Origin: Amphiscolops sp. MND2022
Taxonomy: Eukaryota
Direction of reading: 5' to 3'
Assembly: GCA_964187785.1 (NCBI GenBank)
Contig: OZ076410.1
Span: 28,396,001 to 28,460,000, forward strand
DNA length: 64,000 nt
Positions 14,701 through 49,510 of this stretch are shown here, piece after piece. A program made the position numbers and the translations under genes. Below the pieces are notes generated by a model, which was not told the DNA's origin, ran no database searches, and saw only the letters and a program-made list of their open reading frames with translations. Numbering within the stretch: position 1 is the first letter of the stretch; each line of letters opens with the position of its first letter.

Positions 14701-14701
14701 A

Positions 14702-17345: not shown

Positions 17346-17528
17346 TTCCGGTGATATTTTTGGCTCTGTGTAAGCTATGAAGTACCTGAAGTTTTTGCGA
17401 AATTTGAGAAAGTAATCAGGCGTTTATTCGATCATTGCTTCAACTATTTCAACTGAAAAACTTCCTATTTTTACTTTTAAGCTCATTGTTGTTCTTAAAT
17501 GGATGGAAAAGAAGTTTATTTGAAAAGT

Positions 17529-26989: not shown

Positions 26990-27238
26990 GTACGTAAAAT
27001 AGGTCACCACTTTCTCTGCTCAGACACTATGTAAACAAAATGATTTTGAAGTGCTTTCTTTTGTTTGCTCAAGTAGCAGTGAAATTTTATCACCCTGCGA
27101 AAGGCATAAAATTGATCTCAGGGTCGTAAAATTTCCGGAAGCCAATCCCCCGTTGAAAGAGTGGAGTAGTCACCGACCCGTTGAAAGAGTGGAGGAGTCA
27201 CTTGACCCTCTAATCACCAAAAAATTTTACATACTACT
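26990..27238 (-). repeat. Right terminal inverted repeat of the Maverick
   Basis: Reverse complement of 9031-9270; ends ACATACTACT. Confidence 0.92.
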
Positions 27239-28978: not shown

Positions 28979-29369
28979 AGTATTATATGTGCGAGCTGAT
29001 CAGGTGTGGGGGGGTGCAACACCCTCATGTTTTAAGATAGGCTATAGCGCCTCAGCTCGAACACGACTCGCTTCTCGTGTGGTGCTGGCTCGTGCTGCCG
29101 ACATGAGTCGTGCTGATTTGCTGATTGGCTGAATCAAACAAGTCGACTACATAACCTTTATACATTGAATGTATAAAGGTTATGTAGTCGACTTGTTTCC
29201 AATGTATAAAGATGTGTTCAATGTACGAAGATAAGGAATAGCTTCGGCAATGTCTTAAGATAGTGAATAGGGTTTTTTCGGCACTTTTTTGGCACTGTGT
29301 GACATTTTCGGCATTGTGAGACTTTGGGTAAACATACAACTTTGGGTGGCTGCAGCCGCCGCCGAGCAA

Positions 29370-29470
29370 TATTTTTTCAGCCTGCGCAATATATTATTCG
29401 CCTGCGGAATATTTTATCCGCCTGCGGAATATTTTATTGGCCATCGGAATGTTTTATCCGCCATAAACGT
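29370..29470. repeat. Subterminal ~20-bp tandem iterons (aatattttatccgcctgcgg), mirrored at ~49050-49150
   Basis: Four to five degenerate copies at each end, in inverted orientation. Confidence 0.8.
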
Positions 29471-29582
29471 TGAGCTCATTACTTGAATACTATGTGTTGA
29501 GGAAAAAATCATGTTTAAGTAGAAAAAAAAACGAAATATAATGTATAAATTTGTTACAAATGTATTTAAAAAAAAAGAAATG

Positions 29583-32500
29583 TCAAATAGTTAGTGGACG
29601 AGTGTGAATTCTATCTTCCTGAACTTTACGCTTAGGATAAAAATAAGAGAGTCCTTTTTTCGTCTGTTCGTAAGTACCAACATTGTGTTAAATTACACGA
29701 AAACCACGGTCACGTTGAGTGTCTCTTCTAAAACTTTTCTATATTTGGACATTGATCCATCGCCACTGCTTCAATGCTGCTTTAATGCTGCCTTATCCTC
29801 TTGTTTGATCCTTTGCTGCTAAACTTGAATTTTGTGATTGGTAATCAAAACAGCAATACGTCTTGCTGCACAGACACAACATTTCTGTGCAACGGAATTC
29901 TTTCTAGAAGAGTCCAGGTTCGCGCTTGTCATGTTTCTTGTGTTTTGTGCAGCAAGTAGGGGGAAAGAAATTTACATTGGCTCTGAAGTCGTCTGCACAA
30001 TCCGAGGATCGGAGATCTATCCGCTCTCGGTTTTCATCAGGGTGAACAGTGTCTTATAATTCTTCTTCAACCAATGCAAGAATAAGTGAGTCTGTATCCA
30101 TTTCAAGCATCTCAAACTTATTAATGTCACAATGCTTGTCGAAAAAGTTGTAATAGAGCTCCAACTTTCACAATTTAGCATATTGCAGAATGAAGAATCC
30201 AACAATGATTGGTTCCCTGTGCTCATTCTCAGACTTTACAAGCTCCACCTCGTACAACTTCTCATCGATAATTTTCAGTCTCCTGAACATTTTGTTGTTG
30301 ATAGCTGCGTGCGCTTTTTCGTCGCATAATAACTTTGTGACAGCCTGACGGCTCCTGTCCATAATTTGATAGTCGTATGAACTGTTTGCGAGCAGCTTCA
30401 TTGTCTCTGCTACAACACTGGTGTTGGGATTCTCATCTCCTTCTCTTCTTGCATCGACTGCGGACTGAGCACATTTGTTGAAGCATTTCTTAGTGTTTTA
30501 CTGAACAAATCGATAAATCGTTTTACAAATCAACCCCAAACTCAAGTAAAGAGTAACAGAGGTGTTATTAGTGTTCCATTCTCCAGCGAATAGCTAGAAA
30601 TTAACATTCTCCTCGGTTGCGATAAAAATCCTTTTTGTTCAGCATAACTTTTCATCAACGATCCAATGTCATCTCTGCCCACGTTAATAATTTTAAAGAT
30701 TGGAGGAAAGTTAGCAAATTTTTGATTCTCTCCAACAATCTCTCTTCGCTGAGAGGTATTTTGTAGGGGAAAGACTGACGTAATAGCTGCTTGACTGGAA
30801 CGTAGGTTTCGTAAAGCTGCCACCACTCAATTCATACATTTCCATAACTGTATACCCCTTTTCCAATAAATAATGTCTTTGCAACTCATCCATCTCTCTC
30901 TTTTTGTTCCCCTCTGTAAAAGAAGGACCTGCTTCTTGAAATGGACAGTAATGATAATAACACCCCATGGCTTCAAATACAGTGTTACAGTGTTCACAGA
31001 AACCGTCAACGCTGAAGCAGTCAATCTTTTACTGTGTTCCTGTGGTGTAGGAGCTGACAATTTTACAGTCTGGTCTGATTCGTTGATAGTAAGACATTAC
31101 CATGTTCTCAAAGCTCCTGGTCTTGTTCTGAATCTACCAGACTTTGGATCGAGATCCCATTGCGTGTAAAGACCAGTAGGCATTTCCTGACACATTGAGA
31201 AGGGGTAAAGCTGACTAACATCAATGCCCACTATTGATTTACAAACGTTTGCTGAAGTACGGATAAGCGTCTCGTCCACAACAGCTTTTCTTGTAAATAC
31301 AATGGATGGACCACCAACCATATTGTCTCGTATCTTATTAAGCAAGTCTTTATCGGTCTCTGTGAAAGGGTAAAATTTCACATTTGTTGATTTGTGGAGA
31401 CACATTTTGGCTAAATTGGGTCAAGTACAACCAAGGTTCAACATATCAATTCATTTGTGGTGGTAAATGCAATCATTTTCTGCATAGCCTCCAGTGTGGG
31501 AACGACGTCCTTGTTATTGTACCAGCGCAAAAAGTCTTCGAACGTAGTCATTTTCTCAGTTTCCCATATATTGACGCAATTCTCATACTTTTGCTTGCCT
31601 GTCAGTGGAGGTTGATTCAATTGCAACTTGATCAAAGCGGACTCTGGAGATGAACCACTCTTGAGCAAGTTTTCAATTTCAGTATAATCACTCTCCAGGG
31701 GGTTCGAATTTCGCAATTTGTTGAAAAATGACTCATAGGGAGGTAATTGCGTGTCATTTAGCTTTTCAGGACAGTCGAACCATTCATATGTGAAGTAACT
31801 TTTCGTCTCTGACGTCTTGTGAGCTTTGAGGAAAGAATCAAGCTGGTTGCTCCACCCAAGAAATTCAGAATATCCAGCAACGGAACATCTCCAAATTTGA
31901 AAGAGACAAATTGATTCGCTTTTTTCTTACTGTTGGCTCCAGCTCTCTCTCGATAACCAATAACGGTAACAAATAATGCTTGATGATGTTAATGTCGTAT
32001 ATGGAACTATTGTAGCCAAAGACTGGTAACACGTTGCAATGTCTTTCCAAGTGTTCCTGCAAGTCAAGAAGTTGATTCGTTTGCATTTGCAAGAATTGAG
32101 TAGAAACGTCTTTTCCTTCAACCTCAAGACATTCATCTTCAAATTCCAACACAATATTTCTTGGTCCGCCTCTTCCATTGAGTACAACAAAAACTGCAAT
32201 GAGACGGCTTTTGATGCTAGTCTTGATATCTAAAAACTGTAGTTTCATTTGAGCTTTGCTCTGTGCGGCTAAACTCTCCAGAGCAACAAAAAATGATTCA
32301 ATCGAATCTCGCCGGTTGGAATTGCATAGAAATATTGGGGTTTCAATCAAAATGGACGATATAGATACAGATATCGGTACGGGCTTCCCAATCCACTGTG
32401 TTGTCTCGGTATCCTTGAATTGTTCCTCTCTCACACAAATTGATTCAAAGTCAAAGAAGTTTATGAACAATTGCTGTTTTTTTGTGTAAGGTATGGAAAG

Positions 32501-33718
32501 GAAGTCCAGTTTATCAAACAGCGTTTCACTCAATTGATACTTATTTCTCGGGTAAACGTGTTTGATGCGATCCTTGCAAATAACCAAGTGACGTTCCAAA
32601 TTTCCAGTTTTGTTGAAAACCTGGTTACCATTTGAACAACGATAAGCTTTGAATAATGCATTGTTATTGGAGACGTAACAAATGTGAGTATTGTAACGCA
32701 ATAATCTGGCAGTGTTGCAATACTTCTGAACACTCCTCCGTGCGAGTTCACCGACACTTGATCCACCCACAATATCGATATCGTAACGAAAGATAATGAC
32801 TTGAATCAGGTCTTCAACAAGAGGAATATCGTCCACGCAGACTCCTTGGAAAGTTGCTGCTCCTATTTCTCCTTCCTTTTCCAAATACCAATTGAACAAT
32901 TTGCAAGTCTCTTCCTCCAATTTTTCATTTCCGTGGAGATGAAGTGCTAATACTCTGAATAAACACAATTTGTCGTTATAGGGTTGTCTAGTGTTCTGCT
33001 CGAATGTCAAACAGTTCACAGTATGATTTTTCGGTAGTGGATCAGGGAGTACAGCATCTGTACAACCCATGGGAATGTCTTTGAGCAGAGCAGCAATCAC
33101 AGATAGATTGGTGAGCTTGTAAAATTTCCATTTTGTATTCAACCTTTCTCTAGTACAAGATTCTATTACGTCAGTTTGATTCACATGGTTTTTCAATTTT
33201 GTCAAGTCGTCTTTAGTGCACAAAAGTTGTGATCGATCCAACAAATTATTGTTTTTGTGCGCGTAGAAACATCGGTAACTTCCATCTTCTAAATTTTTTA
33301 GAATGAATCCGAATGCGAGGTTAACTTTTGCAGCACACTTCAAGTTGTTGAAAAAATGATCAATTTTATCATTGACAATGTCCGTGTTCAGTGTTTCCAC
33401 TGCGTAATTAAACACGTTATGTCGCTCACGTTCGAATTCAGAGTCCACGAGAAAATTTTGACAGGCACGTAACTCCTCTTTGAGTCTCTCATCATCGATA
33501 CCATCAAAAAAGGAGAAGAATCGTCACTTGTTTTATAAGTGTCTCCATGTACTTGACTTTTATGTTGTCGTAATCCAAAAGAGCCAGTAAATGTGTCTTT
33601 GCAAATAATACAAATGTGAGCAACTGCGGGTTTGGGAGCTCCATGCTTCTTTGCAATGTGATAATTCAAGTCATTTTGGGACTTGGTTGAGAAATTGGGA
33701 CATTGAGTCATTGAACCA
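29583..33718 (-). pseudogene. VSR-type protein-primed family B polymerase, left-arm copy
   Basis: NDKLCLFR; FDFES; GYNSSIYD; GGPSIVF; GIDVSQLYP; VDGFCEHCNTVFEAMGCYYHYCP (VSR-like); KLLANSSY; many lesions. Confidence 0.9.
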
Positions 33719-33779
33719 TGAAAGGAATAGTTAGCCTACCATAAAAAAAAGTAATTACGCACTGGCGTCAGTGTTCCCT

Positions 33780-34010
33780 CAAGTACCTGTCAATCACTTT
33801 TAATCTTCCTGGAAGTTGAATGCTCAAGTGGAACATGTTTCCCTCAGGGGAAGACACATTGTCTGAGAAAGTCACTCAAGTTGAACATATTTGCCTCAAG
33901 GGACGCCACAGTAACTGAGGAAATTACTCAAGTGGAACAACTTCCCTCGAAAAGACGCTAATACATCTGGGGAAACTTCTCAAGTGGAGTAATTATCCGA
34001 CCATAAAAAA
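33780..34010. promoter_or_regulatory. Degenerate ~60-bp repeats (ctcaagtggaaca) in the divergent intergenic region upstream of pPolB; also at ~38900-39150 and ~44070-44330
   Basis: Repeated motif between divergently oriented ORFs; regulatory role is inferred only. Confidence 0.4.
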
Positions 34011-34212
34011 AGCTGGTTACCTTTTCATCTTGCATTCCTTTATTTGCAATCCATAAATGGAAAAAAACAAGACTGTTAGTGCAGCGGTTGAAAACAAAGT
34101 CACGCGCTGTTCATAGCATCGTCATAATTTTTTCTGTCGACGTAGGCCTTGCCTTTATCCACTACACTAAATTTCTTTTCTCTTTCTAAATTAAACTCTT
34201 TTAGAGTAGTGA

Positions 34213-35025
34213 ATGTCTGTTAAACAACAACTTCCATCTCTATCTTTGCTGTATTCAATTTACGAAGACGTTCCAGAACAAACATTGGACGAAACTGACG
34301 TTGACTCGTACTTTTATCACAATATATTGGACGTTACAAAGACGGACAATCGTCTCGTGCGAGTCAGCAAGGAGTCCAATAAAAACTTATTTCAATCAAA
34401 GTCTTTGAATTTTGCGACTTGAAAGCTCAACAACGCTTTTTCCTTGACAAGGAAATTTCCATCACAAAAACAAGAGCTCGCTGCGACCCTCAGCAGACTG
34501 CGTCGCTTTTGAAAACAGTACGACCACGCACGAAAGCCAACTCAATATCCCCTACCAAAACCGTTACACGAGATTGGCTTCACGCTGTGGAAGGACGAAC
34601 GCTTCTCACACTATTATCTAATTTTAAAAAGCACACTGATCGTCATTTGCTTTTGTCTTCCCGCTTTGAAAAAGACAAGAATTGTTGTTTTTCATTGAAA
34701 AAGTTTCTATATGGGGGAAATCAGCTTGTATTGACAGAAATTGTCAACTTCAGTCACAACGAACTGTAGGAACTGTGTAAGGACCGCTTCTTAATATCGA
34801 CCAAGAGCGGAATCATTGAAAGCAACTACGACGTCTAAAGGAACTCAACGCAATTATAAATACAATTGGGGACGATTGCTGTCCTGAATGTGAGCTACAA
34901 AAAAGCATATTCGAACATTACTGCGAGGAGGATTCTAGAGAACATTATCAATACAATTGTGCAAAGTGTGACATTGATTGCCTGGTGCAGGGTATTCTTT
35001 TTAAGGATCAAACGCGGCACTTGAT
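34213..35025 (+). pseudogene. Decayed accessory ORF, possibly PC4-like; mirrored at 38030-38695 and 43192-43857
   Basis: MSVKQQLPSLSLLYS...FTLWKDE...CFSLKKFLYGGNQ...VNFSHNEL; three copies. Confidence 0.6.
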
Positions 35026-35320
35026 CCTAAAAGATGCTGGTATACATTCATTCAGAGCCAGGACGACAAGGGATTACGAGCGAGAACAAACACAACGAGT
35101 CAAAAACGACAAAGGAATGGATTTTCTATGACAATTCCTAAAAAAGCCAACCAATCAACGCTCAGAAGAACCACCAGCAAAAAAAACAAGTCCATGTAGA
35201 GAAAAGGTCGTGTCAAATTCCTATTGGCTGTTCAATATCCTTACAAATTAATTTTTCAAGCAACTAGACTTCATTTCATTTCAAACTTATCTACAATCAT
35301 GACGTTCTACAACAACAACA

Positions 35321-35734
35321 ATGTTCTTCTCAGTCTCCAACACTGTAACTCAGTGGAGTTTGGACTTTTCACCAGACTCTGTCACAATCATAGTGAACGA
35401 TATCGTCCAAGACTTGACAATTTCCTACTTGGAACTTCCAATCGCAGCCTTCAACACTTTGATAAATCAAAGACAACAGTTCTTAGAGAACCATTTAGCT
35501 CGCGTACCCATAACTCCCAACCAGCAAGGCACGTGGGAGATGCAAGACGAGGCACGAGCCAGCGTTGGTGACCACGATGTAAGCAGCGATTTCGTTCCCA
35601 ATGACTTGGATGCCACTCAGTTCCATTGGGAGAATCCAAACGTAGAGCTGGATGCAGTGTATCGACCAGGCATTGATACTCCCTTCTTTCCGTCACTGTT
35701 TGAAACCTTTCCAGTAGCTGAAAGCGCAGACTAG
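35321..35734 (+). CDS. Unknown accessory ORF, left arm
   Basis: 137-aa frame preserved in both arms (mirror at 37317-37730). Confidence 0.55.
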   Translation: MFFSVSNTVTQWSLDFSPDSVTIIVNDIVQDLTISYLELPIAAFNTLINQRQQFLENHLARVPITPNQQGTWEMQDEARASVGDHDVSSDFVPNDLDATQFHWENPNVELDAVYRPGIDTPFFPSLFETFPVAESAD

Positions 35735-35953
35735 CCCATTGAAATTGACGATGAACAAGATAAAGAGAGCGAGTACCCCACAACACCCGAGTCACAGAGA
35801 CCCACGCAGACGCCACCGCTGCATAGTCCATTCGGGACTCATTTGGAAGATATACCAAACGCTGTGTACCGTAGTTTGTTTGAATAATTGTATTTATTTT
35901 ACGTAATCAATTCAATTTTTATTATTCACAATTTCTTTCTCAAATTGGTTGTT

Positions 35954-36196
35954 ATGTGTGAGACGATAGCAAACGTAAGAGTTGCCTTGATTATTGTCCT
36001 AACTGTAAGCTTGTTTATTTATCAAATAGAGACTAAAGAAAAAGTGGGACAAAATCTCGATCCCTGCGCTAAAGTGTACAAGGACTATTGTGTGAACGAG
36101 GTAGAATGTTTTAGCTACGTGGAAGGAAACATTTTAGGTTGTTTCTGTCGTCCACTTTACGGAGGGAAACGCTGTGATAAATTCTTGTGGTGGTAA
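35954..36196 (+). CDS. Intact 80-aa EGF-like growth factor with N-terminal hydrophobic segment
   Basis: MCETIANVRVALIIVLTVSLFIYQ...CAKVYKDYCVNEVECFSYVEGNILGCFCRPLYGGKRCDKFLWW (C-7-C-5-C-10-C-1-C-8-C). Confidence 0.9.
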   Translation: MCETIANVRVALIIVLTVSLFIYQIETKEKVGQNLDPCAKVYKDYCVNEVECFSYVEGNILGCFCRPLYGGKRCDKFLWW

Positions 36197-36229
36197 TAGG
36201 AATGTTAGTTGCACATTTCCCAATTAAAA

Positions 36230-36815
36230 TTTGACGTAAAAATTGTACCTTAAAAACTGACGTGACGTGAAAATTTTACATTAAAATCTGACGTGTTGTA
36301 AAAATTTTACGTTAAAATCTGACGTGTTGTAAAAATTTTACTTTAAAATCTGAAACGTTGTAAAACATTTGCTCCGACTGCCATGTTCTACTCTGTTTGC
36401 ACTATTGGATTAGTCTTGTTAACCTTACTAGCACTCGCTACAGTCGCCGTTTCCTTTGGTCTGTTCGTTATTGTAATTAGTGATTAATGTTCTTCCACAA
36501 AAGATATTAACAAAAGACAATAAACGAGAAAAAAGACAAAAACACTCCGTGAAAACGACAAATTTTGCACTTGCGATACATTATTATAAAACAGATTTCG
36601 AAGCAATTTTACGTCCTGTCAGATTTTGAAGTGAAAATTTTCCTTCTTGTCAGATTTTAAAGTAAAATTTTTTCGTCTTGACAGATTTTAAAGTAAAGTT
36701 TTTACAACATGTCAGATTTTAAAGTAAAACTTTTACAACAAGTCAGATTTTAACGTGAAATTATAACAACACGTCAGATTTTAATGTAAAATTTTTACGT
36801 CACGTCAGATTTCGA
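36230..36815. repeat. Centre of the fold-back: ~30-bp tandem repeats (aaaatctgacgtgttgtaaaaattttacgtt) in inverted orientation around a ~240-bp unique spacer
   Basis: Repeats at ~36230-36365 and their reverse complements at ~36600-36815. Confidence 0.85.
36383..36487 (+). CDS. 34-aa single-TM hydrophobic micropeptide
   Basis: MFYSVCTIGLVLLTLLALATVAVSFGLFVIVISD*; below the ORF-track cutoff. Confidence 0.45.
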   Translation: MFYSVCTIGLVLLTLLALATVAVSFGLFVIVISD

Positions 36816-36830
36816 TTGGGAAATGTGCAA

Positions 36831-37085
36831 CTAACATTCCTTATACCACCACAAGAAATTATCACAGCGTTTCCCTCCGTAAAGTGGAGGACAGAAACAA
36901 CCTATAATGTTTTCTTCCACATAGCTAAAACATTCTACCTCGTTCATACAATAGACTTTGAACACTTTAGCGCAGGGATCGAGATTCTGTCACACTTTTT
37001 CTGTAGTCTTTACTTGATAAATGAACAAGCTAACAGTCAGGACAATAATCAAGGCAATTCTTACTTTTGCTATCGTCTCACACAT
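36831..37085 (-). pseudogene. Mirror copy of the EGF-like gene with an internal TGA
   Basis: All six Cys retained; GGA->TGA before the EGF domain. Confidence 0.85.
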
Positions 37086-37316
37086 AACGACCACTTTGAA
37101 AAAGAAACTGTGAATCAAAAAAATTCAATTGATTACGTAAAATAAATACAAATAATCATACAAACTACGATGCACAGCGTTTGGTATAATTTCCAAACGA
37201 GTCCCAATTGGACGGCTCAGTGATCTATGCAGCGGTGGCGTCTGCGTGGGTCTCTGTGACTCGGGTGGTGTGGGGTACTCGCTCTCTTTATCTTGTTCAT
37301 CGTCAATTTCAATGGG

Positions 37317-37730
37317 CTAGTCTGCGCTTTCAGCTACTGGAAAGGTTTCAAACAGTGACGGAAAGAAGGGAGTATCAATGCCTGGTCGATACACTGCATC
37401 CAGCTCTACGTTTGGATTCTCCCAATGGAACTGAGTGGCATCCAAGTCATTGGGAACGAAATCGCTGCTTACATCGTGGTCACCAACGCTGGCTCGTGCC
37501 TCGTCTTGCATCTCCCACGTGCCTTGCTGGTTGGGAGTTATGGGTACGCGAGCTAAATGGTTCTCTAAGAACTGTTGTCTTTGATTTATCAAAGTGTTGA
37601 AGGCTGCGATTGGAAGTTCCAAGTAGGAAATTGTCAAGTCTTGGACGATATCGTTCACTATGATTGTGACAGAGTCTGGTGAAAAGTCCAAAGTCCACTG
37701 AGTTCCAGTGTTGGAGACTGAGAAGAACAT
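37317..37730 (-). CDS. Mirror copy of the 35321-35734 ORF
   Basis: Near-identical translation. Confidence 0.55.
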   Translation of the reverse strand: MFFSVSNTGTQWTLDFSPDSVTIIVNDIVQDLTISYLELPIAAFNTLINQRQQFLENHLARVPITPNQQGTWEMQDEARASVGDHDVSSDFVPNDLDATQFHWENPNVELDAVYRPGIDTPFFPSLFETFPVAESAD

Positions 37731-39413: not shown

Positions 39414-42400
39414 ATGCCTGCTCTTGATCGAAATCTACAAGTTGCCTGTCCCAATTGTGGTGCCAAAGTATCTAAGCAAAACCTGTCAGTACACAAAAAA
39501 AAAGATTCTCCGTTGTGGCTTTATTTTTCTTTCAATGTCCCAATTTCTCAACCAAGTCCCAAAATGACTTGAATTATCGCATTACAAAGAAACATGGAGC
39601 TCCCAAACCCGCAGTTGCTCACATTTGTAAGATTTGCAAAAACAAATTTACTGGCTCTTATGCATTACGACAACATAAAAGTCAAGTACATGGAGACACT
39701 TATAAAACAAGTGACGATTCTTCTCCCCTCTTTGATGGTATCGATGATGAGAGACTCAAAGAGGAGTTACGTGCCTGTCAAAATTTTCTCGTGGACTCTG
39801 AATTCGAACGTGAGCGACATAACGTGTTTAATTACGCAGTGGAAACACTGAACACGGACATTGTCAATGATAAAATTGATCATTTTTTCAACAACTTGAA
39901 GTGTGCTGCAAAAGGTAACCTCGCATTCGGATTCATTCTAAAAAATTTAGAAAATGGAAGTTACCGATATTTCTACGCGCACGAAAACAGTACTTTGTTG
40001 GATCGATCACAATTTGTGTGCACCAAAGACGACTTGACAAAATTGAAAAACATTGTCAATCAAACTGACTTAATAAAATCTTGTACCAGAGAAAGGATGA
40101 ATACAAAATGGAAATTTTACAAGCTCACCAATATATCTGTGTTTGCTGCTTTGCTCAAAACATTCCCATGGGTTGTAGAGATGCTGTACGCCCTGATCCA
40201 CTACTGAAAAACCACAATGTGAACTGTTTGACATTCGAGCAGAACACTAGACAACCCTATAACGACAACTTGTGTTTATTCAGAGCATTAGCACTTCATC
40301 TCCACGGAAAGGAAAAATTGGAGGAAGAGACTTGCAAATTGTTCAATTGTTATTTGGAAAAGAAAGGAGGAATAGGGGCAGCAACCTTCCAAGGAGTCTG
40401 CGTGGACGATATTCCTCTTGTTGAAGGCCTGATTCAAGTCATTATCTTTCGTTACGATATCGATATTGTGGGTGGATCAATTGTCGGTGAACTCGCACGG
40501 AGGAGCGTTCAGAAGTATTGCAACACTGCCAGATTATTGCGTTACAATAACCACATTTGTTACGTCTCCAATAACAATGCATTATTTAAAATTTATCGTT
40601 GTTCAACTTGTAACCAGGTTTTCCACAAAACTGGACGTTTGGAACGTCACTTGGTTAATTGCAAGGATCGCATCAAGCACGTTTATCCGAGAAATAATCA
40701 TTACGATACACGTACCGGTAAGCTGCCTTTAGTCAAGCAGCGTAATCTGAGTAAAATGGTAAAATGGTCATTCAGCGTAAGTTAGTCAAGACGGTCTATG
40801 CTTCAACGGTGTAGCAAAATCAACGCGCGTAATGGAAAATTGTGTAAGTTAGTCAAAACACGTAATTAGAAAAAAGCGGAAGTTAGTCCAAAAATACTCT
40901 TTTTCGTAAGTCAGTCAAAACGTTGACTAACTTCCACTTTTTGCAAATTGAGGGACTCCTATACTTCCGAAAAGTGGAATGTGGTCAAAGTTTTGACTAA
41001 CTTACACCATGTTTATATGCATTCAAAACTCAGTGTTCATTTTAATTCTAATTCATACCACAGCATCATAAACCAGTCAAAGTAAACAATGATTCAATAA
41101 ATAATTAGTTATCATTACTGAGCTCTACCGTGCATAGTACGTATAAACTGCATTCAATGCAAGTTGCACACGTGAACACGTGTGTTTCATCCACGCATTT
41201 ACGTGCAAATAAAATACCTTGTAGGTATCGCAAGGATCGCATCCATTGCAAGGATCGCATCAAACACGTTTACCCGAGAAATAAGTATCAATTGAGTGAA
41301 ACGCTGTTTGATAAACTAGACTTGCTTTCCACGCCTTACACAAAAAAACAGCAATTGTTTTTAAACTTGGCCGCCTTTGACTTTGAATCAAATTGTGTGA
41401 GAGAGGAACAATTCAAGGATACCGAGACAGCACAATGGATTGGGAAGCACGTGCCAATATCTGTATCTATATCGTCCAATATGATTGAAATATCAATATT
41501 TTCTCTGCAATTCCAACCCGGGAGAATTGATTGAATCATTTGTTGTTGCTCTGGAGAGTTTAGCCGCTCAGAGCAAAGCCCAAATGAAGCTACAGTTTTT
41601 AGATATCAAGACTAGCATCAATAGCCGTCTTAATGCAATTTTTGCTGTACTCAATAGAAGACGCAGACCAAGAGAAACCGTGTTGGAATTTGAAGATGAA
41701 TGTCTTGAGGTTGAAGCAAAAGACGTTTCTACTCAGTTCTTGCAAATGCAATAGAATCAACTCCTTGACTTGCAGGAATACTTGGAAAGAGATCGCAACG
41801 TGATAGCAATCTTTGGCTACAATAGTGCCAAATACGACATTAACCTTATCAAGCGTAATTTTTACCATTATTGGTTAACGAGAGAGAGCTGGAGCCAAAA
41901 AGCGAATCAATTTGTTCTTTTCAAAATTGGCGATGTTCAGTTGCTGAATATTTTGAATTCCTTCGGTGGAGCAACCAGCCTTGATTCTTTCCTCAAAGCT
42001 TACAAGACGTCAGAGAGGAAAAGTTTCTTCCCATATGGATGTTTCGACTGTCCTGAAAAGCTAAATGACACACAATTACCTCAATATGAGTCATTTGAGT
42101 CAATATGAACCATATGAGTCATTCAACAAATTGCGAAATTCAAACCCACTGGAGAGTGATTATACTGAATATAAAAAATTGCTCAAGAGTGGTTCATCTC
42201 CGGGAGTCTGCCTTGATCAAGTTGCGGTTGAAACAACCTCCACTCTTAGGGAAGCAAAATTATGAGTATCTCGTCAACATATGGGAGACTGATAAAATGA
42301 CTACGTTCAAAGACTTTTTGCGCTGGTACAATAACAAGGACGTCATTCCCACACTGGAGGCTTTGCAGAAAATGATTGCGTTTTACCAACACAAAGAAAT

Positions 42401-43169
42401 TGATATGTTGAAGCTTGGTTGTACTTCACCCATTTCAGCCAACATATGTCTCCACAAATCAACAAATGCGAAATTTTACTCTTTCACAGAGAACGATAAA
42501 GACTTGCTTAATAAGATACGAGACAAAATGGTTGGTGGTCCATCCATTGTATTTACAAAAAAGCTGTTGTGAACGAGACGCTTATCCGTACTTCAGCAAA
42601 CGTTTGTAAATCAATAGTAGGCATTGATGTTTGTCAGCTTTACCCCTTCTCAATGTGTCAGGAAAGGCCTACTGGACTTTACACGCGATGTGATCTCGAT
42701 CCAGAGTCTGGTAGATTCAGACCCCGTCAGAACAAGACGAGGAGCTTTGAGATTATGGTAATGTCTTACTATCAACGAATCAGACCAGACTGTAAAATTG
42801 TCAGCTTCTAAACCACAGGAACACAGTAAAAGATTGACTGCTTCAGCGTTGACGGTTTCTGTGAACATTGTAACACTGTATTTGAAGCCATGGGGTGTTA
42901 TTATCATTACTGTCCATTTCAAGAAGCACGTCCTTCTTTTACAGAGGAAGGTATTCAGAGGGGAACAAAAAAAGAGAGAGATGGATGAGTTGAGAAGACA
43001 TTTTTTATTGAAAAAGGGGTATACAGTTATGGAAAAGTATGAGTTGAGTGGTGGCAGCTTTACGAAACCTACGTTTTAGTCACGCAGATTTTACGTCAGT
43101 CTTTCCCCTACAAAACACCTCTCAGCGAAGAGAGATTGTTGGAGAAAATCAAGAATGGAAGCCTTTTTT
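39414..43169 (+). pseudogene. VSR-type pPolB, right-arm copy 1 (interrupted by an insertion, 3'-truncated)
   Basis: N-terminal zinc fingers MPALDRNLQVACPNC...; same motifs as 29583-33718; ends at a tandem-duplication junction. Confidence 0.9.
40700..41232. mobile_element. ~530-bp non-coding insertion in pPolB
   Basis: Absent from the copies at ~32540 and ~45845; internal gttagtcaa/ttgactaac repeats; flanked by a ~40-bp duplication of pol sequence. Confidence 0.75.
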
Positions 43170-46100
43170 TGTATACCAGCAACTTTTAGGGTCAAGTGCT
43201 GCGTTTGATCCTTAAAAAGAATACCTTGCACCAGACAATCAGTGTCACACTTTGCACAATTGTAATGATAATGTTCTCTAGAATCCTCCTTGCAGTAATA
43301 TTCGAATATGCACTTTTGTAGCTCATATTCAGGACAGTAAACGCCCCAATTGTATTTATAATTGCGTTGAGTTCCAATTTACGTCGTAGTATCTTTCAAT
43401 GATTCCGCTCTTGGTCGATGTAAAATAACGGTCCTTATACAATTCGTACAGTTCGTTGTGACTGAGGTTGACAATATCTGTCATTACAAACTGATTTCCC
43501 CCATATAGAAACTTTTTCAATGAAAAACAACAATTCTTGTCTTTTTCAAAGCGGGAAGACAAAAGCAAATGACGATCAGTGTGCTTTTTTAAAATTATAT
43601 AATAGTGTGAGAAGAGTTCGTCCTTCCACAGCGTAAAACCAATCTCTTGTAACGGTTTTTTTAGGGGATATAGAGTTGCTTTTCGTGCGTGGTCGTACTG
43701 TTTTAAAAAGTGACGCAGTCTGTTGAGGGTCGAGCGAGCTCTTTGTTTGCAATGGAAAGTACGAGTCAACCTCAGCTTCGTCCAAAATTTGTTCTGGATC
43801 GTCTTCGTAAATTGAATACAGCAAAGATAGAGATGGAAGTCGTTGTTTAACAGACATACACTACTCTAAAAGAGTTCAAATTAAAATGATAAATGAAAAT
43901 TAGTGTAGTGGATAAAAGCAACGCCTACGTGCCACAAAATTTTGACAATGCTATGACAACAGCGCGTGACTTTGCTTTTAACCACTGCACTAACAGTCTT
44001 GTTTATTTCCATTTATGGAATGCAAATTAAGGAATGCAAGATGAAAGGGAAACCAGCTTTTTATTATGGTCGAATAATTACTCCACTTGAGAGGTTTCCC
44101 CTGATGTATTAGCGTCTTTTCGAGGGAATTTGTTCCACTTGAGTAATTTTCTCAGACACTGTGGCGTCCGTTGAGGCAAACATGTTCAACTTGAGTGATT
44201 TTCTCAGACAATGTGTCATCCCCTGAGGGAAACATGTTCTACTTGAGCAATTACCTTTCATTGAACTTTTCATTTAACTCAGGATCAAAAGTGGATGACA
44301 GGCACTTGAGGGAACACTGACCATCAGTGACGCTAGTGCGTAATTACTTTTTCCCTTTATGGTACGCTAACTATTCTTTTTATGGTTCAATGACTCATAC
44401 CTTCCGTATCTGGTTGAGCAATTACATAAACAGAATTTTCAACCATTTTCATTTCGTTATTCATTTCACTTTTCTGCAACCTAGTTGATTGCTCCCGAAC
44501 TGAAACTTGCTACATTTTGCTGTTACAATTCTTTTTGCTTGCTTTCAGATAGAGTCTTTTTACACTTGCTGCTTATAATGCCTGCTCTTGATCGAAATCT
44601 ACAAGTTGCCTGTCCTAATTGTGGTACCAAAGTATCTAAGCAAAACCTGTCAGTACACAAAAAAAAAAGATTCTCCGTTGTGGCTCTATTTTGCTTTCAA
44701 TGTCCCAATTTCTCAACCAAGTCCCAAAATGACTTGAATTATCGCATTACAAAGAAACATGGAGCTCCCAAACCCGCAGTTGCTCACATTTGTAAGATTT
44801 GCAAAAACAAATTTACTGGCTCTTATGCATTACGACAACATAAAAGTCAAGTACATGGAGACACTTATAAAACAAGTGACGATTCTTCTCCCCTCTTTGA
44901 TGGTATCGATGATGAGAGACTCAAAGAGGAGTTACGTGCCTGTCAAAATTTTCTCGTGGACTCTGAATTCGAACGTGAGCGACATAACGTGTTTAATTAC
45001 GCAGTGGAAACACTGAACACGGACATTGTCAATGATAAAATTGATCATTTTTTCAACAACTTGAAGTGTGCTGCAAAAGTTAACCTCGCATTCGGATTCA
45101 TTCTAAAAAATTTAGAAAATGGAAGTTACCGATATTTCTACGCGCACGAAAACAGTACTTTGTTGGATCGATCACAATTTGTGTGCACCAAAGACGACTT
45201 GACAAAATTGAAAAACATTGTCAATCAAACTGACTTAATAAAATCTTGTACCAGAGAAAGGATGAATACAAAATGGAAATTTTACAAGCTCACCAATATA
45301 TCTGTGTTTGCTGCTTTGCTCAAAACATTCCCATGGGTTGTAGAGATGCTGTACGCCCTGATCCACTACTGAAAAACCACAATGTGAACTGTTTGACATT
45401 CGAGCAGAACACTAGACAACCCTATAACGACAACTTGTGTTTATTCAGAGCATTAGCACTTCATCTCCACGGAAATGAAAAATTGGAGGAAGAGACTTGC
45501 AAATTGTTCAATTGTTATTTGGAAAAGAAAGGAGGAATAGGGGCAGCAACCTTCCAAAGAGTCTGCGTGGACGATATTCCTTATGTTGAAGGCCTGATTC
45601 AAGTCATTATCTTTCGTTACGATATTGATATTGTGGGTGGACTCGCACGGAGGAGTGTTCAGAAGTATTGCAACACTGCCAGATTATTGCGTTACAATAA
45701 CCACATTTGTTACGTCTCCAATAACAATGCATTATTTAAAATTTATCGTTGTTCAACTTGTAACCAGGTTTTCCACAAAACTGGACGTTTGGAACGTCAC
45801 TTGGTTAATTGCAAGGATCGCATCAAACACGTTTATCCGAGAAATAATTATCAATTGAGTGAAACGCTGTTTGATAAACTAGACTTGCTTTCCACGCCTT
45901 ACACAAAAAAAACAGCAATTGTTTTTAAACTTGGCCGCCTTTGACTTTGAATCAAATTGTGTGAGAGAGGAACAATTCAAGGATACCGAGACAGCACAAT
46001 GGATTGGGAAGCACGTGCCAATATCTGTATCTATATCGTCCAATATGATTGAAATATCAATATTTTCTCTGCAATTCCAACCCGGGAGAATTGATTGAAT

Positions 46101-47730
46101 CATTTGTTGTTGCTCTGGAGAGTTTAGCCGCTCAGAGCAAAGCCCAAATGAAGCTACAGTTTTTAGATATCAAGACTAGCATCAATAGCCGTCTTAATGC
46201 AATTTTTGCTGTACTCAATAGAAGACGCAGACCAAGAGAAACCGTGTTGGAATTTGAAGATGAATGTCTTGAGGTTGAAGCAAAAGACGTTTCTACTCAG
46301 TTCTTGCAAATGCAATAGAATCAACTCCTTGACTTGCAGGAATACTTGGAAAGAGATCGCAACGTGTTAGCAATCTTTGGCTACAATAGTGCCAAATACG
46401 ACATTAACCTTATCAAGCGTAATTTTTACCATTATTGGTTAACGAGAGACAGGTGGATCCAAAAAGCGAATCAATTTGTTCTTTTCAAAATTGGCGATGT
46501 TCAGTTGCTGAATATATTGAATTCCTTGGGTGGAGCAACCAGCCTTGATTTTTTCCTCAAAGCTTACAAGACGTCAGAGACGAAAAGTTTCTTCCCATAT
46601 GGATGTTTCGACTGTCCTGAAAAGCTAAATGACACACAATTACCTCAATATGAGTCATTTGAGTCAATATGAACCATATGAGTCATTCAACAAATTGCGA
46701 AATTCAAACCCACTGGAAAGTGATTATACTGAATATAAAAAATTGCTCAAGAGTGGTTCATCTCCAGGAGTCTGCCTTGATCAAGTTGCGGTTGAAACAA
46801 CCTCCACTCTCAGGGACGCAAAATTATGAGTATCTCGTCAACATATGGGAGACTGATAAAATGACTACGTTCAAAGACTTTTTGCGCTGGTACAATAACA
46901 AGGACGTCATTCCCACACTGGAGGCTTTGCAGAAAATGATTGCGTTTTACCAACACAAAGAAATTGATATGTTGAAGCTTGGTTGTACTTCACCCATTTC
47001 AGCCAACATATGTCTCCACAAATCAACAAATGCGAAATTTTACTCTTTCACAGAGAACGATAAAGACTTGCTTAATAAGATACGAGACAATATGGTTGGT
47101 GGTCCATCCATTGTATTTACAAAAAAGCTGTTGTGAACGAGACGCTTATCCGTACTTCAGCAAACGTTTGTAAATCAATAGTAGGCATTGATGTTTGTCA
47201 GCTTTACCCCTTCTCAATGTGTCAGGAAAGGCCTACTGGACTTTACACGCGATGTGATCTCGATCCAGAGTCTGGTAGATTCAGACCCCGTCAGAACAAG
47301 ACGAGGAGCTTTGAGATTATGGTAATGTCTTACTATCAACGAATCAGACCAGACTGTAAAATTGTCAGCTTCTAAACCACAGGAACACAGTAAAAGATTG
47401 ACTGCTTCAGCGTTGACGGTTTCTGTGAACATTGTAACACTGTATTTGAAGCCATGGGGTGTTATTATCATTACTGTCCATTTCAAGAAGCACGTCCTTC
47501 TTTTACAGAGGAAGGTATTCAGAGGGGAACAAAAAAAGAGAGAGATGGATGAGTTGAGAAGACATTTTTTATTGAAAAAGGGGTATACAGTTATGGAAAA
47601 GTATGAGTTGAGTGGTGGCAGCTTTACGAAACCTACGTTTTAGTCAAGCAGCTTTTACGTCAGTCTTTCCCCTACAAAATACCTCTCAGCGAAGAGAGAT
47701 TGTTGGAGAGAATCAAGAATGGAAGCCTTT
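43170..47730 (+). repeat. Tandem duplicate of 38008-43169
   Basis: At ~43170 pol sequence (aagaatggaagcctttt) switches to ttgtataccagc, as at 38008. Confidence 0.9.
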
Positions 47731-48936
47731 TTGGATATAATCAGTGTGATATTGAAGTTCCTCCAGAGCCCCGCGAACCTTTTGCTAACTTTCCTCCAAT
47801 CTTTAAAAATATTAACGTGAAAAGAGATGACATTGGATCGTTGATGAAAAGTTATGCTGAACAAGAAGGATTTTTATCGCAACCGAGGAGAATGTTAATT
47901 TCTAGCTATTCGCTGGAAAACGTAACACTAATAACACCTCAGTTACTCTTTTCTTTGAGCTTGGGGTTTGTATGTAAAAAGACTTATCGATTTGTTCAGT
48001 ATACCCCTAAGAAATGCTTCAACAAATTTGTTCAGTCCGCAGTCGATACAAGAAGAGAAGGAAATTAGAATCCTAACTCCAGTGTGGTAGCAGCGACAAT
48101 GAAGCTGCTCGCAAACAGTTCGTACGGCAACAAATTATGGACAGGAGCCGTCACACTGTCACAAAGTATTTATGCGACGAAAATGTGCACGCAATTATAA
48201 ACAACAAAATGTCCAGGAGACTGAATATTATCGTGAGAAGTTGTACGAGGGGGAGCTTGTAAAGTCTGAGAATGAGCACAGGGAACCAATCATTGTTGGA
48301 TTCTTCATTCTGCAATATGCTAAATTGAGAAAGTTGGAGCTCTTTTACAACTTTTTCGACAAGCATTGTGACATTAATAAGTTTGAGATGCTTGAAATGG
48401 ATACAGACTCATTTATTCTTGCAGTGGTTGAAGAAGAAATATAAGACACTGTTCGCCCTGATGAAAAACGAGAGTGGATAGATCTCCGTTCCTCGGATTG
48501 TGCAGACGACTTCAGTGCCAATGCAACGACAAATTTCTTTCCCCCTACTTGCTGCACAAAACACAAGAAACATGACAAGCGCGAACCTGGACTCTTCTAG
48601 AAAGAATTCCGTAGCACAGAAATGTTGTGTCTGTGCAGCAAGACGTATTGCTGTTATGATTCCCAATCACAAAAATTCAAGTTTAGCAGCAAAGGGTCAA
48701 ATAAGAGGAAGGAAAATGCAGCATTAAAGCAGCATTAAAGCAGCATTAAAGCAGTGGCGATGGATCAATGTCCGAATATAGAAAAGTTTTAGAAGAGACA
48801 CTCAACGTGACCGTGGTTTTCGTGTAATTGATCACAATGTTGGTACTTCCGACCAGACAAAAAAGGACTCTCTTATTTTTATCCAAAGCGTATAGTTCAG
48901 GAAGATGGAATTCACACTCGTCCACTAGCTATTTGA
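44578..48936 (+). pseudogene. VSR-type pPolB, right-arm copy 2 (full length, many lesions)
   Basis: Includes KLLANSSYG, EMDTDS and ends EDGIHTRPLAI*. Confidence 0.9.
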
Positions 48937-49510
48937 CATTTCGATTTTTTGAAATACTTTTGTAATAAACATTTTCATTACAATTTATTTTTTCTACTTA
49001 AAAATGATTTTTTTCCTCAACACATAGTAGTCAAGTAATGAGCTCAACCTTTATGGCGGATAAAACATTCCGGTGGCGGATAAAATATTCCGCAGGCGGA
49101 TAATTAATCCCGCAGGCGGATAAAATATTGCGCAGGCGGATAAAATATTGCTCGGAGGCGGCAGCAGCTTGCAAGTTTACCCAAAGTCTCACAGTGCCGA
49201 AAATGTCACAGAGTGCCGTAAATGTGCCGGAAAAATCTATTCACTATCTAAGTACATTGCTGAAGCTATTCCTTATCTTCATACATTGAACACATCTTTA
49301 TACATTGGAAACAATACGACTACATAACATTTATACATTAGTCAGCCAATCAGCACGACTCAAGTCGGCAGCACGAGCCAGTACCACACGAGAAGCGAGT
49401 CGTGGCCTGCAAGACCCTTCTCGACTCTGGGTTGGAACCGAGTCGCTATAGCCTATCTTAAAACATGATGGTCTTGCACCCCCACCTGGTCAGTTCGCAT
49501 ATATACTACT

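What the first reader, a model, noticed from the sequence alone, without database searches (positions are those of the whole stretch)
28979..49510. Giant fold-back, capsid-less and integrase-less pPolB element that still made a 6-bp TSD
The layout is end-pPolB-ORFs-EGF | spacer | EGF-ORFs-pPolB-end. The arms are ~7.4-kb mirror images, so the 'TIRs' are nearly the whole element. No integrase, capsid, ATPase or protease is recognisable, yet the termini and the 5/6-matching 6-bp TSD are Maverick-like. This fits a snap-back defective genome or a satellite replicon that replicates with its own polymerase and borrows integrase and virion from a helper such as the neighbouring Maverick.
Basis: partly seen in the sequence, partly recalled or inferred. 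Interest (0 to 1): 0.85.

Follow-up and report, generated by a model that had tools for sequence, protein, structure and literature searches.

The report
Mirror-image remnant of a Maverick
This is a dead, mirror-image leftover of an ordinary Maverick (a virus-like jumping element): the polymerase half is present twice, head to head, and has replaced the integrase and capsid half. It is an unusual shape for this kind of element, but probably arose as a one-off copying accident rather than as a new kind of satellite.

Summary
The palindrome is real. It spans 28979-49510, has AGT../..ACT Maverick-type ends and a 5/6-matching 6-bp flank, and its left arm (28979-36370) is mirrored on the right around a 234-bp spacer.

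That is why the element is 20.5 kb and not about 15 kb.

Each arm carries a protein-primed polymerase gene (all three copies broken), a zinc-ribbon gene, a 192-aa gene and a small EGF-like gene.

Intact relatives in a public assembly that also holds the allelic locus (L006, L007) continue past the EGF gene and 31-bp arrays. There they encode an A32-type ATPase and an rve integrase; another relative (L004) has a double-jelly-roll capsid gene. None of these genes is in the window's element.

All five related insertions sampled are ordinary, not palindromic.

The two arms are each other's closest relatives (7% apart). They share 4 stop codons and 2 frameshifts in the polymerase that no relative has, so the polymerase was already dead when the arms were last one sequence.

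My best reading is a copy-back rearrangement of an already decayed full-length insertion, in place, anchored on its terminal repeats. The rival, which I cannot exclude, is a snap-back defective genome integrated in trans. Interest is moderate.

The parts
28979..49510 (.). Whole palindromic Maverick derivative (20,532 bp; about 14.8 kb without the tandem duplication and the 547-bp insertion)
   Evidence: Self-BLAST and end alignment. A 23-nt subterminal motif occurs exactly twice in the window, once at each end.
28973..28978 (+). Left copy of the 6-bp target-site duplication (CATAGG)
49511..49516 (+). Right copy of the 6-bp target-site duplication (CTTAGG; 5/6 match)
28979..36370 (.). Left arm. 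It is collinear with the polymerase-side end of intact relatives L006 and L007 up to the 31-bp arrays.
   Evidence: The allelic contig L005 matches it at 96-97% up to 35079.
29586..33708 (-). pPolB gene, left copy, broken. Against L006 I count 13 frameshifting indels (one of them probably an L006 peculiarity) and 12 stops.
29368..29462 (.). Subterminal 20-bp tandem repeats, left (mirror copy at 49055-49149)
34213..35185 (+). Zinc-ribbon gene, left copy, broken by stops. It is homologous to the L006 135-aa and 121-aa ORFs and to the L002 298-aa ORF.
35321..35884 (+). Homologue of the L006 192-aa ORF, left copy (one stop). It lies partly inside a 687-bp block (35140-35826) that is 99% identical between the arms.
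35954..36196 (+). EGF/ErbB-ligand-like small ORF, left copy, open (80 aa plus stop)
36236..36370 (.). 31-bp tandem array at the inner edge of the left arm
   Evidence: Homologous arrays in L006 lie at 7066-7233 and 6838-6925.
36371..36604 (.). Central spacer, unique in the window. Its left part aligns weakly (about 61-65%) with the sequence that follows the arrays in L001 and L006. Its last ~60 bp align with the relatives in the right arm's orientation. The turn is therefore asymmetric.
36605..36812 (.). 31-bp tandem array at the inner edge of the right arm
36843..37085 (-). EGF-like ORF, right copy (one stop)
37155..38695 (-). Right inner copies of the 192-aa gene and the zinc-ribbon gene, broken
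39414..43174 (+). pPolB, right inner copy. It is cut short by the duplication junction, interrupted by the 547-bp insertion, and broken by further frame changes and stops.
40698..41245 (.). 547-bp insertion found only in the inner copy, flanked by a 39-bp duplication of arm sequence
   Evidence: It has a weak 72% match to the foreign DNA in L005.
38007..47732 (.). Tandem duplication: unit 38007-43168 repeated at 43169-47732 (98.5-99.0% identical; 2-3 bp microhomology at the junction)
44578..48933 (+). pPolB, right outer copy, full length but broken. Against L006 I count 16 frameshifting indels (one of them probably an L006 peculiarity) and 7 stops.
9031..27238 (+). Neighbouring canonical Maverick of another lineage. 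It has a perfect TSD (ATTCTT), AGTAGT..ACTACT ends and ~245-bp TIRs. Its genes are: EGF-like 9545-9676, A32-type ATPase 11374-12031, rve integrase 12902-13832, double-jelly-roll capsid 15079-16347, and weak pPolB 21395-22621.

Best explanation
A full-length Maverick of the L006/L007 type inserted here and made the 6-bp duplication.

Its gene order was: end, pPolB, zinc-ribbon gene, 192-aa gene, EGF-like gene, 31-bp arrays, small ORFs, A32 ATPase, rve integrase, capsid module, end.

It then decayed in place until its polymerase gene carried several stops and frameshifts.

Next, one replication accident in the chromosome produced the palindrome (inferred). The copying strand turned back at the 31-bp array, which is AT-rich and partly self-complementary. 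It copied the polymerase-side arm outward again, then returned to the original template through the homology between the two terminal inverted repeats.

The result was end-arm-spacer-arm'-end. The integrase, ATPase and capsid half was skipped, and the original flanks and target duplication stayed untouched.

The arms then drifted 7% apart. A 5.16-kb tandem duplication and a 547-bp insertion came later.

Shown: the structure, the gene content, the descent from a canonical family, the sister relation of the arms, the shared lesions, and the dead state today.

Inferred: the template-switch mechanism and that it happened in the chromosome.
For: Structure and ends.

Canonical relatives at 84-89% nucleotide identity carry rve (40.2 bits) and Pox_A32 (26.9 bits) just beyond the point where the window's arms stop. 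A further relative, L004, has a capsid gene. None of these genes is inside the element.

The arms are sister sequences. Quartet site counts are 98 for left+right against L006+L001, versus 3 and 2 for the alternatives. The arm distance is 7.0%, against 10.5-13% to the relatives.

The arms share 4 stop codons and 2 frameshifting indels in pPolB. L001, L007, L002 and L004 all have the intact state at these sites. Divergence between the arms around these lesions is ordinary (mean 6.3% against 8.1% at random positions), so they are not recent conversion patches.

Substitutions on the branch shared by the arms are 44% synonymous. The figure is 61% between live lineages and 22-30% on the private arm branches. 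This means roughly half of the shared branch was neutral decay.

The outermost ~650 bp of the arms is 10.7% diverged against 7% overall, as expected if the original terminal repeats are older than the rest of the arms.

None of the five related insertions is palindromic.

The locus shows other in-place copying events: the tandem duplication, an insertion with a 39-bp flanking duplication, and a 244-bp orphan pPolB piece 1.1 kb outside the element.

A two-switch mechanism of this kind, with homology between inverted repeats at one junction and microhomology at the other, is established for human DUP-TRP/INV-DUP rearrangements (my own knowledge).
Against: - Shared lesions and shared neutral changes would also arise if the palindrome formed early, even before integration, and its arms were then kept alike by gene conversion. 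A 687-bp block near the centre that is still 99% identical shows that conversion has acted here.
- The higher divergence of the outer 650 bp could reflect weaker conversion far from the centre, or poor alignment in tandem repeats.
- The central junction is too decayed to show microhomology.
- The terminal-repeat length of intact family members is unknown, because I never reached their other end.
- No orthologous locus with the full-length ancestor was found.
- The only independent assembly of this locus (L005) leaves the window's sequence at 35079, before the centre. It neither confirms nor refutes the turn.
Confidence: 0.5

Rival explanations
1. Snap-back (copy-back) defective genome made outside the chromosome. 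During protein-primed strand-displacement replication of a linear Maverick genome, the polymerase turned back at the 31-bp array. This made a molecule of about 15 kb with two identical polymerase-side ends. An integrase supplied in trans by a complete element of the same family inserted it and made the 6-bp duplication. The shared polymerase lesions arose afterwards and were spread to both arms by gene conversion, or the parent was already a helper-dependent lineage.
For: - Two bona fide ends and a 5/6 target duplication.
- One turn with a unique, asymmetric spacer derived from the parent's next sequence.
- The original size of about 15 kb lies within the unit length of the family. The neighbour is 18.2 kb, and more than 14.5 kb of L007 is element sequence with the far end not reached.
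- Complete relatives with an integrase exist in a public assembly that also holds the allelic locus.
- Conversion between the arms is visible near the centre.
- From my own knowledge: incomplete adenovirus particles and pGKL1-derived hairpin plasmids (Kikuchi 1985, title seen) carry the same kind of mirror-image genomes, and poxviruses replace one genome end with a copy of the other.
Against: - No second palindromic copy among five related insertions.
- Six lesions shared by the arms lie in regions of ordinary arm-to-arm divergence. This needs an added assumption: early concerted evolution or a dead-polymerase lineage.
- No relative shares those lesions.
Confidence: 0.3
2. Assembly artefact. 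The turn at the centre was joined wrongly inside the 31-bp arrays, and/or the 5.16-kb tandem duplication is a retained overlap of two haplotypes.
For: - The duplicated copies differ by 1.0-1.5%. This equals the allelic distance between the window's left arm and L005 (1.4%).
- L005 departs from the window at 35079, only 33 bp from the mirror position of the duplication junction.
- The centre lies in tandem repeats.
Against: - The arms are 7% apart by real substitutions, so this is not a folded read.
- The right arm is the sister of the left arm yet distinct from it.
- The right arm's outer flank matches the left flank at 5 of 6 bases. That would be a coincidence if the right arm belonged to another locus.
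- The left arm is collinear with L006 straight through 35079, so L005 is the derived state there.
- There are no N runs in the window.
- The duplication junction has a clean 2-3 bp microhomology.
Confidence: 0.1
3. Two separate insertions of related elements, head to head, followed by a deletion that removed the inner halves of both.
For: The region is packed with Mavericks: three within 50 kb.
Against: - The outer flanks form a 5/6 duplication (p about 0.005).
- Both arms stop within about 300 bp of the same internal point.
- The arms share 98 derived sites and six lesions that no other copy has.
- Only two termini are present.
Confidence: 0.03

Closest known systems
Canonical Mavericks/Polintons (for example the intact vertebrate elements of Barreat and Katzourakis 2021, PMC8097293, and nematode Polintons, PMC10748475)
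   Same: - Protein-primed family B polymerase.
- (AGT)2//(ACT)2-type ends.
- 6-bp target duplication.
- Size range of 13-25 kb.
- Relatives of this very element carry an rve integrase, an A32 ATPase and a double-jelly-roll capsid gene.
   Different: Reported terminal repeats are 46-1,447 bp (PMC8097293) or 100-1,500 bp (PMC10748475). Here the repeat is 7.4 kb and contains the polymerase gene. Integrase, ATPase and capsid genes are absent.
Snap-back / copy-back defective viral genomes. These include the long-inverted-repeat genomes of incomplete adenovirus particles (my own knowledge; the general class is described in PMC13506859).
   Same: A highly symmetric palindrome built from one genome end of a protein-primed linear replicon, with loss of the other half.
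   Different: Those are extrachromosomal replication products seen in infected cells. This is one integrated, decayed copy, whose polymerase seems to have been dead before the arms separated. Dependence on a helper is not shown.
Hairpin / palindromic deletion derivatives of the yeast linear killer plasmid pGKL1 (Kikuchi et al. 1985; title seen, content from my own knowledge)
   Same: A protein-primed linear element with its own pPolB gives rise to a mirror-image derivative of one end.
   Different: That one is a cytoplasmic plasmid with no integration and no target duplication.
Inverted-repeat-mediated replicative rearrangements in chromosomes (DUP-TRP/INV-DUP type, BIR/MMBIR; my own knowledge)
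   Same: Two template switches, one through homology between inverted repeats and one through microhomology, produce an inverted duplicate in place.
   Different: Those events add copies between large low-copy repeats. Here the switch would lie inside one transposon and delete its other half.
Terminal transpositions / inverted-terminal-repeat expansion in poxviruses (my own knowledge)
   Same: Sequence from one end replaces the other end, which lengthens the terminal repeat and deletes genes.
   Different: Poxvirus ends are hairpins, not protein-primed. Those genomes remain viable viruses.

Membership tests
Maverick/Polinton | [quoted passage not shown] | tested here: met
   Three copies, all broken. 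The homologue P0007 passes Pfam DNA_pol_B_2 (33.1 bits) and maps over all copies. The L006 polymerase ORFs are 72-87% identical to the arms over their longest matching stretches.
Maverick/Polinton | Retroviral-type (rve) integrase gene | tested here: not met
   The L006 integrase (rve, 40.2 bits) finds the neighbour and the partial copy at 1-4029 but nothing in 28979-49510.
Maverick/Polinton | Double-jelly-roll major capsid protein gene | tested here: not met
   The capsid family is verified by an AF2 model (pLDDT 77) and Foldseek hits to PBCV-1 Vp54 and the mavirus capsid protein (E 1e-12 to 1e-15). tblastn finds it at 15079-16347 and 2704-3970 only.
Maverick/Polinton | A32/FtsK-type packaging ATPase gene | tested here: not met
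   The L006 ATPase (Pox_A32, 26.9 bits) hits 11374-12031 in the neighbour only.
Maverick/Polinton | Adenain-like maturation protease gene | tested here: inconclusive
   No Pfam hit on any ORF of the element. I identified no protease in the relatives either, so I had no family-specific probe.
Maverick/Polinton | Terminal inverted repeats, with reported lengths of 46-1,500 bp | tested here: met
   Inverted termini are present, but the repeat runs 7.4 kb, about five times the longest reported value.
Maverick/Polinton | 6-bp target-site duplication and AG/AGT...ACT/CT end motif | tested here: met
   CATAGG / CTTAGG (5/6). The ends are AGTATT... and ...ACTACT. The motif is as given in PMC8097293.
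Snap-back defective genome of a protein-primed replicon | Two arms that are mirror copies of one genome end, joined at a single turn with a short unique loop | tested here: met
Snap-back defective genome of a protein-primed replicon | Formed during extrachromosomal replication and maintained or moved with a helper | not testable with these tools
   The sequence alone cannot date the turn relative to integration. The six shared polymerase lesions speak against a self-replicating origin but not against replication in trans.
Snap-back defective genome of a protein-primed replicon | Recurrence: further copies of the same palindrome at other sites | tested here: inconclusive
   None among five related insertions (L001/L003, L002, L004, L006, L007). 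A whole-genome search was not possible.
Foldback-type transposons | Long terminal repeats built of short subrepeats, with little or no unique coding sequence in the arms | tested here: not met
   The arms are unique gene-bearing sequence, collinear with a canonical Maverick. Tandem repeats are confined to small arrays.

The most novel reading that the evidence does not exclude
The element is a fossil snap-back defective genome of a Maverick. It would have formed while the virus-like element replicated as a free linear, protein-primed molecule, and was then inserted into the germ line by an integrase supplied in trans. That would be the first sequence record that Mavericks throw off defective genomes of the adenovirus type, and that such genomes can be integrated.
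Probability: 0.3. Interest if true: 0.75.

Novelty: new variant of a known kind. Interest (0 to 1): 0.42.

Why it matters
Mavericks are thought to replicate as linear protein-primed genomes and to be viruses as well as transposons, but direct traces of their replication are scarce.

A mirror-image derivative made of the polymerase end, with the target duplication intact, is what a copy-back error of such a replicon would leave. If it formed before integration, it would document defective genomes and trans-integration in this group.

If it formed in place, as I think slightly more likely, it matters in two smaller ways:
- It is a clean example of terminal-repeat-anchored template switching remodelling a large transposon.
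- It is a warning for annotation pipelines that define Mavericks by short terminal repeats and one polymerase gene.

Apart from the finding, both Maverick lineages in the window carry a small secreted EGF/ErbB-ligand-like gene. Among viruses I know this from poxviruses, and none of the Maverick papers I could search mentions it.

Tried and rejected
- Pfam on about 40 ORF pieces of the element and the neighbour gave almost nothing: weak C2H2, one weak DNA_pol_B_2, and EGF. Identities came only through relatives.
- PDB sequence searches with the polymerase piece and three neighbour ORFs were empty.
- A 23-nt subterminal motif (29026-29048 and its mirror at 49445-49467) gave no hit in IMG/VR or in JGI metagenome contigs.
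- An exact look-up of a window ORF found no record, so the source genome itself could not be searched.
- One contig look-up (P0155) was not sent because the queue was full.
- The two most intact distant relatives (P0007, P0012) had gene tables but no DNA.
- The AF2 model of the zinc-ribbon protein failed (pLDDT 31), so its fold was not searched.
- Rfam and tRNA scans were empty.
- The old papers on adenovirus defective DNA and the hairpin plasmid are not held.
- I considered that each arm is a complete small element with its own ends. I rejected this because the terminal sequence is absent near the centre.
- I considered that repeat R (51008-52588) belongs to the element. I rejected this because the window's copy of R runs uninterrupted through the point where L001's element sits.
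- One of three apparent shared frameshifts was dropped, because three relatives also show it. It is probably a peculiarity of L006.

A possible slip: the tblastn tables printed list piece-by-piece match bounds for the broken polymerase copies, and these roughly show where frames change.
Full report
**1. What is in the sequence**

A self-comparison of the window shows that 28979-36370 is repeated in inverted orientation on the right side of the region.

- The left end reads AGTATTATATGTGCG...
- The reverse complement of the right end reads AGTAGTATATATGCG...
- The six bases outside the ends are CATAGG and CTTAGG. A match of at least 5/6 has a chance of 19/4096.
- A 23-nt subterminal motif occurs exactly twice in the window, once at each end.

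The centre is a 234-bp stretch that is unique in the window (36371-36604). It lies between two inverted arrays of a 31-bp repeat.

Read from the outer end inward, it follows the left arm's sequence up to the equivalent of 35046. It then jumps back to about 30718 and runs on to the centre. In other words, a 5.16-kb unit (38007-43168) is repeated in tandem at 43169-47732.

- The two units are 98.5-99.0% identical.
- The arms are 7.0% apart by substitutions, with transitions about equal to transversions and few gap events.
- The arm divergence is therefore real evolutionary divergence, not read error.
- The inner unit also carries a 547-bp insertion flanked by a 39-bp duplication.
- The duplication junction has 2-3 bp of microhomology.

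**2. What the arms encode**

The one long open frame (552 aa, 31868-33523, minus strand) has no Pfam hit of its own, but it has thousands of homologues.

- A 1162-aa relative passes Pfam DNA_pol_B_2. It aligns to all three copies in the window.
- Close homologues carry C2H2 fingers, as the window's copies do.

The polymerase points outward. A set of genes on the other strand points toward the centre:
- a zinc-ribbon protein with three CxxC...CxxC repeats (more than 1,100 homologues, no Pfam family);
- a 192-aa protein;
- a small protein with a hydrophobic leader and one EGF domain of the receptor-ligand type (best PDB match HB-EGF, E = 3e-06; then heregulin, betacellulin and others).

All three polymerase copies are broken by many frame changes and stops. 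One copy is also cut short by the duplication junction. Only the left EGF-like ORF is still open.

**3. Relatives show what is missing**

One public assembly (ENA ERZ25074608) holds the allelic or orthologous locus and several paralogues.

L006 and L007 are 84-89% identical to the window's arms. They are much better preserved. From the same ...ACTACT terminus they run through:
- pPolB (633 + 796 aa in L006);
- the zinc-ribbon gene, the 192-aa gene, the EGF-like gene and the 31-bp arrays;
- four small ORFs;
- a 276-aa A32-type ATPase (26.9 bits against a cut-off of 22.8);
- a 137-aa ORF;
- a 312-aa rve integrase (40.2 bits against a cut-off of 32.6);
- further genes.

A more distant relative (L004) has a capsid gene upstream.

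The window's arms stop at the arrays. When the L006 proteins are searched against the window, the following find nothing inside 28979-49510: the integrase, the ATPase, the 267-aa ORF and the 150-aa ORF (all four have matches elsewhere in the window) and the remaining small ORFs (no match anywhere in the window). The polymerase, zinc-ribbon, 192-aa and EGF proteins find every arm.

So 'integrase-less and capsid-less' is correct. The element is a derivative of a canonical Maverick in which the inner and far half has been replaced by a mirror copy of the polymerase half.

The spacer is not foreign. Its left part aligns weakly with what follows the arrays in L001 and L006. Its last ~60 bp align with the relatives in the right arm's orientation. 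The turn is therefore asymmetric, as in a fold-back with a loop.

**4. The neighbour**

The element at 9031-27238 is a canonical Maverick:
- a perfect 6-bp duplication (ATTCTT);
- AGTAGT...ACTACT ends;
- ~245-bp terminal repeats;
- an EGF-like ORF, an A32 ATPase and an rve integrase;
- a capsid gene whose family gives a double-jelly-roll model (pLDDT 77) matching PBCV-1 Vp54, the iridovirus and Sputnik capsid proteins, and the mavirus capsid protein at E 1e-12 to 1e-15.

It belongs to another lineage. Its polymerase is only about 29% identical to L006's, and it is itself degraded. Window 1-4029 is a 97% copy of part of it.

**5. How old, and from what**

On a 3-kb alignment the two arms are each other's closest relatives. 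There are 98 sites grouping left+right against L006+L001, versus 3 and 2 for the alternatives.

L005 groups with the left arm (86 against 3) at 1.4% distance. L005 matches the window at 96-97% from 21766 through the left flank and the left arm up to 35079. The insertion site is therefore shared, and the arms separated about five times earlier than these two haplotypes.

Beyond 35079, L005 runs into at least 7.6 kb of unrelated, ORF-poor DNA. The left arm of the window is collinear with L006 through that point, so L005 is the derived state there. The rest of that contig could not be fetched. L005 therefore neither confirms nor refutes the turn.

**6. The polymerase was dead before the arms separated**

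Against the open L006 frames, the two arms share four stop codons and two frameshifting indels (1 bp and 10 bp) in the polymerase. L001, L007, L002 and L004 all have the intact state at these six sites. A third shared indel was dropped, because three relatives also show it.

Arm-to-arm divergence around the shared lesions is ordinary (mean 6.3% against 8.1% at random positions). They do not sit in recently converted patches.

Substitutions on the branch shared by the arms are 44% synonymous. This lies midway between live lineages (61%) and the private, neutrally decaying arm branches (22-30%). About half of that shared branch was therefore neutral decay.

The outermost ~650 bp of the arms is 10.7% diverged against 7% overall.

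All of this fits the following history:
- a full-length insertion decayed for a while, its short terminal repeats diverging from the start;
- it then underwent one copy-back event;
- the arms then drifted apart for somewhat longer than the earlier decay.

It fits equally well an early palindrome whose arms were kept alike for a time by gene conversion. A 687-bp block near the centre that is still 99% identical shows that conversion has acted here. The sequence alone cannot separate the two histories.

**7. Mechanism I commit to, and its rival**

Most likely (about 0.5) is an in-place replicative accident with two template switches:
- The nascent strand turned back at the AT-rich, partly self-complementary 31-bp array.
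- It copied the polymerase arm outward.
- It then returned to the original template through the homology between the terminal repeats.

This skips the integrase, ATPase and capsid half and preserves the flanks and the old target duplication.

Supporting points:
- Two-switch events of this kind are known from human inverted-repeat-mediated rearrangements (my own knowledge).
- The locus shows other in-place copying events: the tandem duplication, the 547-bp insertion with a 39-bp duplication, and a 244-bp orphan piece of pPolB at 50655-50898.
- All five related insertions I could inspect are ordinary.

It needs only one switch, and it has good precedents in adenovirus incomplete particles and pGKL1 hairpin plasmids (my own knowledge; the titles appear). 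However, it needs concerted evolution or a dead-polymerase lineage to explain the six shared lesions, and no second copy was seen.

An assembly artefact (about 0.1) is unlikely for the turn, but it is a live possibility for the tandem duplication. The 1.0-1.5% divergence of the duplicated copies equals the allelic distance. Two independent head-to-head insertions are essentially excluded.

**8. Comparison with what is known**

Reported Maverick terminal repeats are 46-1,447 bp in vertebrates and 100-1,500 bp in general, with (AGT)2//(ACT)2 or (AG)3//(CT)3 ends and 6-bp duplications (PMC8097293, PMC10748475). The ends and the duplication here fit. The 7.4-kb repeat containing the polymerase gene does not, and three hallmark genes are missing.

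I found no paper in the searchable library describing a copy-back or palindromic Maverick. I file it as a non-autonomous, rearranged derivative of a known kind, not a new kind of element.

**9. Verdict**

- The layout is partly mis-described, because the tandem duplication was missed.
It is a mirror-image, integrase-less and capsid-less Maverick derivative. But it is a single dead fossil whose polymerase seems to have been broken before the arms separated, and there is no sign of a satellite lineage.
- Interest is moderate (0.42). If an extrachromosomal origin could be shown, the interest would be high.

**10. Possible slip**

The tables print piecewise match bounds for the broken polymerase copies. 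These roughly show where frames change.

Noticed in passing
window 35954-36196 (+), 36843-37085 (-), 9545-9676 (+); L006 7248-7496 (-): Both Maverick lineages in the window carry a small ORF with a hydrophobic leader and a single EGF domain of the receptor-ligand type. The best PDB hit is HB-EGF (E = 3e-06), followed by an ant EGF-like venom peptide, heregulin and betacellulin. Among viruses I know such growth-factor genes from poxviruses (my own knowledge). None of the ten Maverick, Polinton and adintovirus papers listed by the search contains the phrase 'epidermal growth factor'.
   Followed up: partly
window 9031-27238: A canonical Maverick of another lineage. It has a perfect 6-bp TSD (ATTCTT), AGTAGT..ACTACT ends, ~245-bp TIRs, an rve integrase, an A32 ATPase, a double-jelly-roll capsid gene ('F54H12.2-like' family) and a badly fragmented pPolB. 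A 1.5-kb array of 107-bp repeats lies at 23.9-25.4 kb.
   Followed up: yes
window 1-4029: A partial second copy (97% identical) of the integrase-to-capsid part of the neighbour type (matching 12173-16407). It ends just after the capsid gene.
   Followed up: partly
L005 1-7602 versus window 35079; window 43169/43170: The allelic contig leaves the window's sequence at 35079 and runs into at least 7.6 kb of unrelated, ORF-poor DNA. The window's tandem-duplication junction lies at the mirror position, 35046, only 33 bp away. A short hairpin-capable motif lies at about 35010-35040. This could be coincidence, a fragile site or an assembly issue. It is unresolved.
   Followed up: partly
window 50655-50898: A 244-bp orphan piece of the pPolB gene, 1.1 kb outside the right end. 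It is 94% identical to the left arm and 90% to the right copies. It looks like a templated insertion.
   Followed up: partly
window 51008-52588; L001 14372-15949; L003 14007-15564: A ~1.5-kb repeat at about 71% identity. In L001 and L003 it starts directly at the end of the related Maverick. The window's copy is uninterrupted at that point, so it looks like an empty-site paralogue.
   Followed up: partly
L001 1-7732; L003 1-7690: The related, non-palindromic insertion (two haplotigs, 97.5% identical including flanks) has its own tandem duplication of about 5.1 kb, covering the inner genes, the EGF cassette and part of the zinc-ribbon gene. It also has an extra tandem copy of the EGF cassette. 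This family seems prone to internal duplications.
   Followed up: partly
L002 7540-8433 (-); window 34213-35185 (+): The gene transcribed divergently from pPolB encodes a ~300-aa protein with three CxxC...CxxC zinc-ribbon-like repeats. It has more than 1,100 homologues, no Pfam family and no name. The AF2 model was unusable (pLDDT 31).
   Followed up: partly
window 61576-64000 (-): The pol region of an LTR retrotransposon (RNase H, integrase zinc-binding and C-terminal domains) in a GC-richer block (56-64 kb, 45-50% GC).
   Followed up: partly
protein P0007 (a relative, not in the window): A 1162-aa relative of this polymerase carries a DUF559 / Vsr-like endonuclease match (24.7 bits) after the polymerase motifs, and C2H2 fingers in the N-terminal region.
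   Followed up: no
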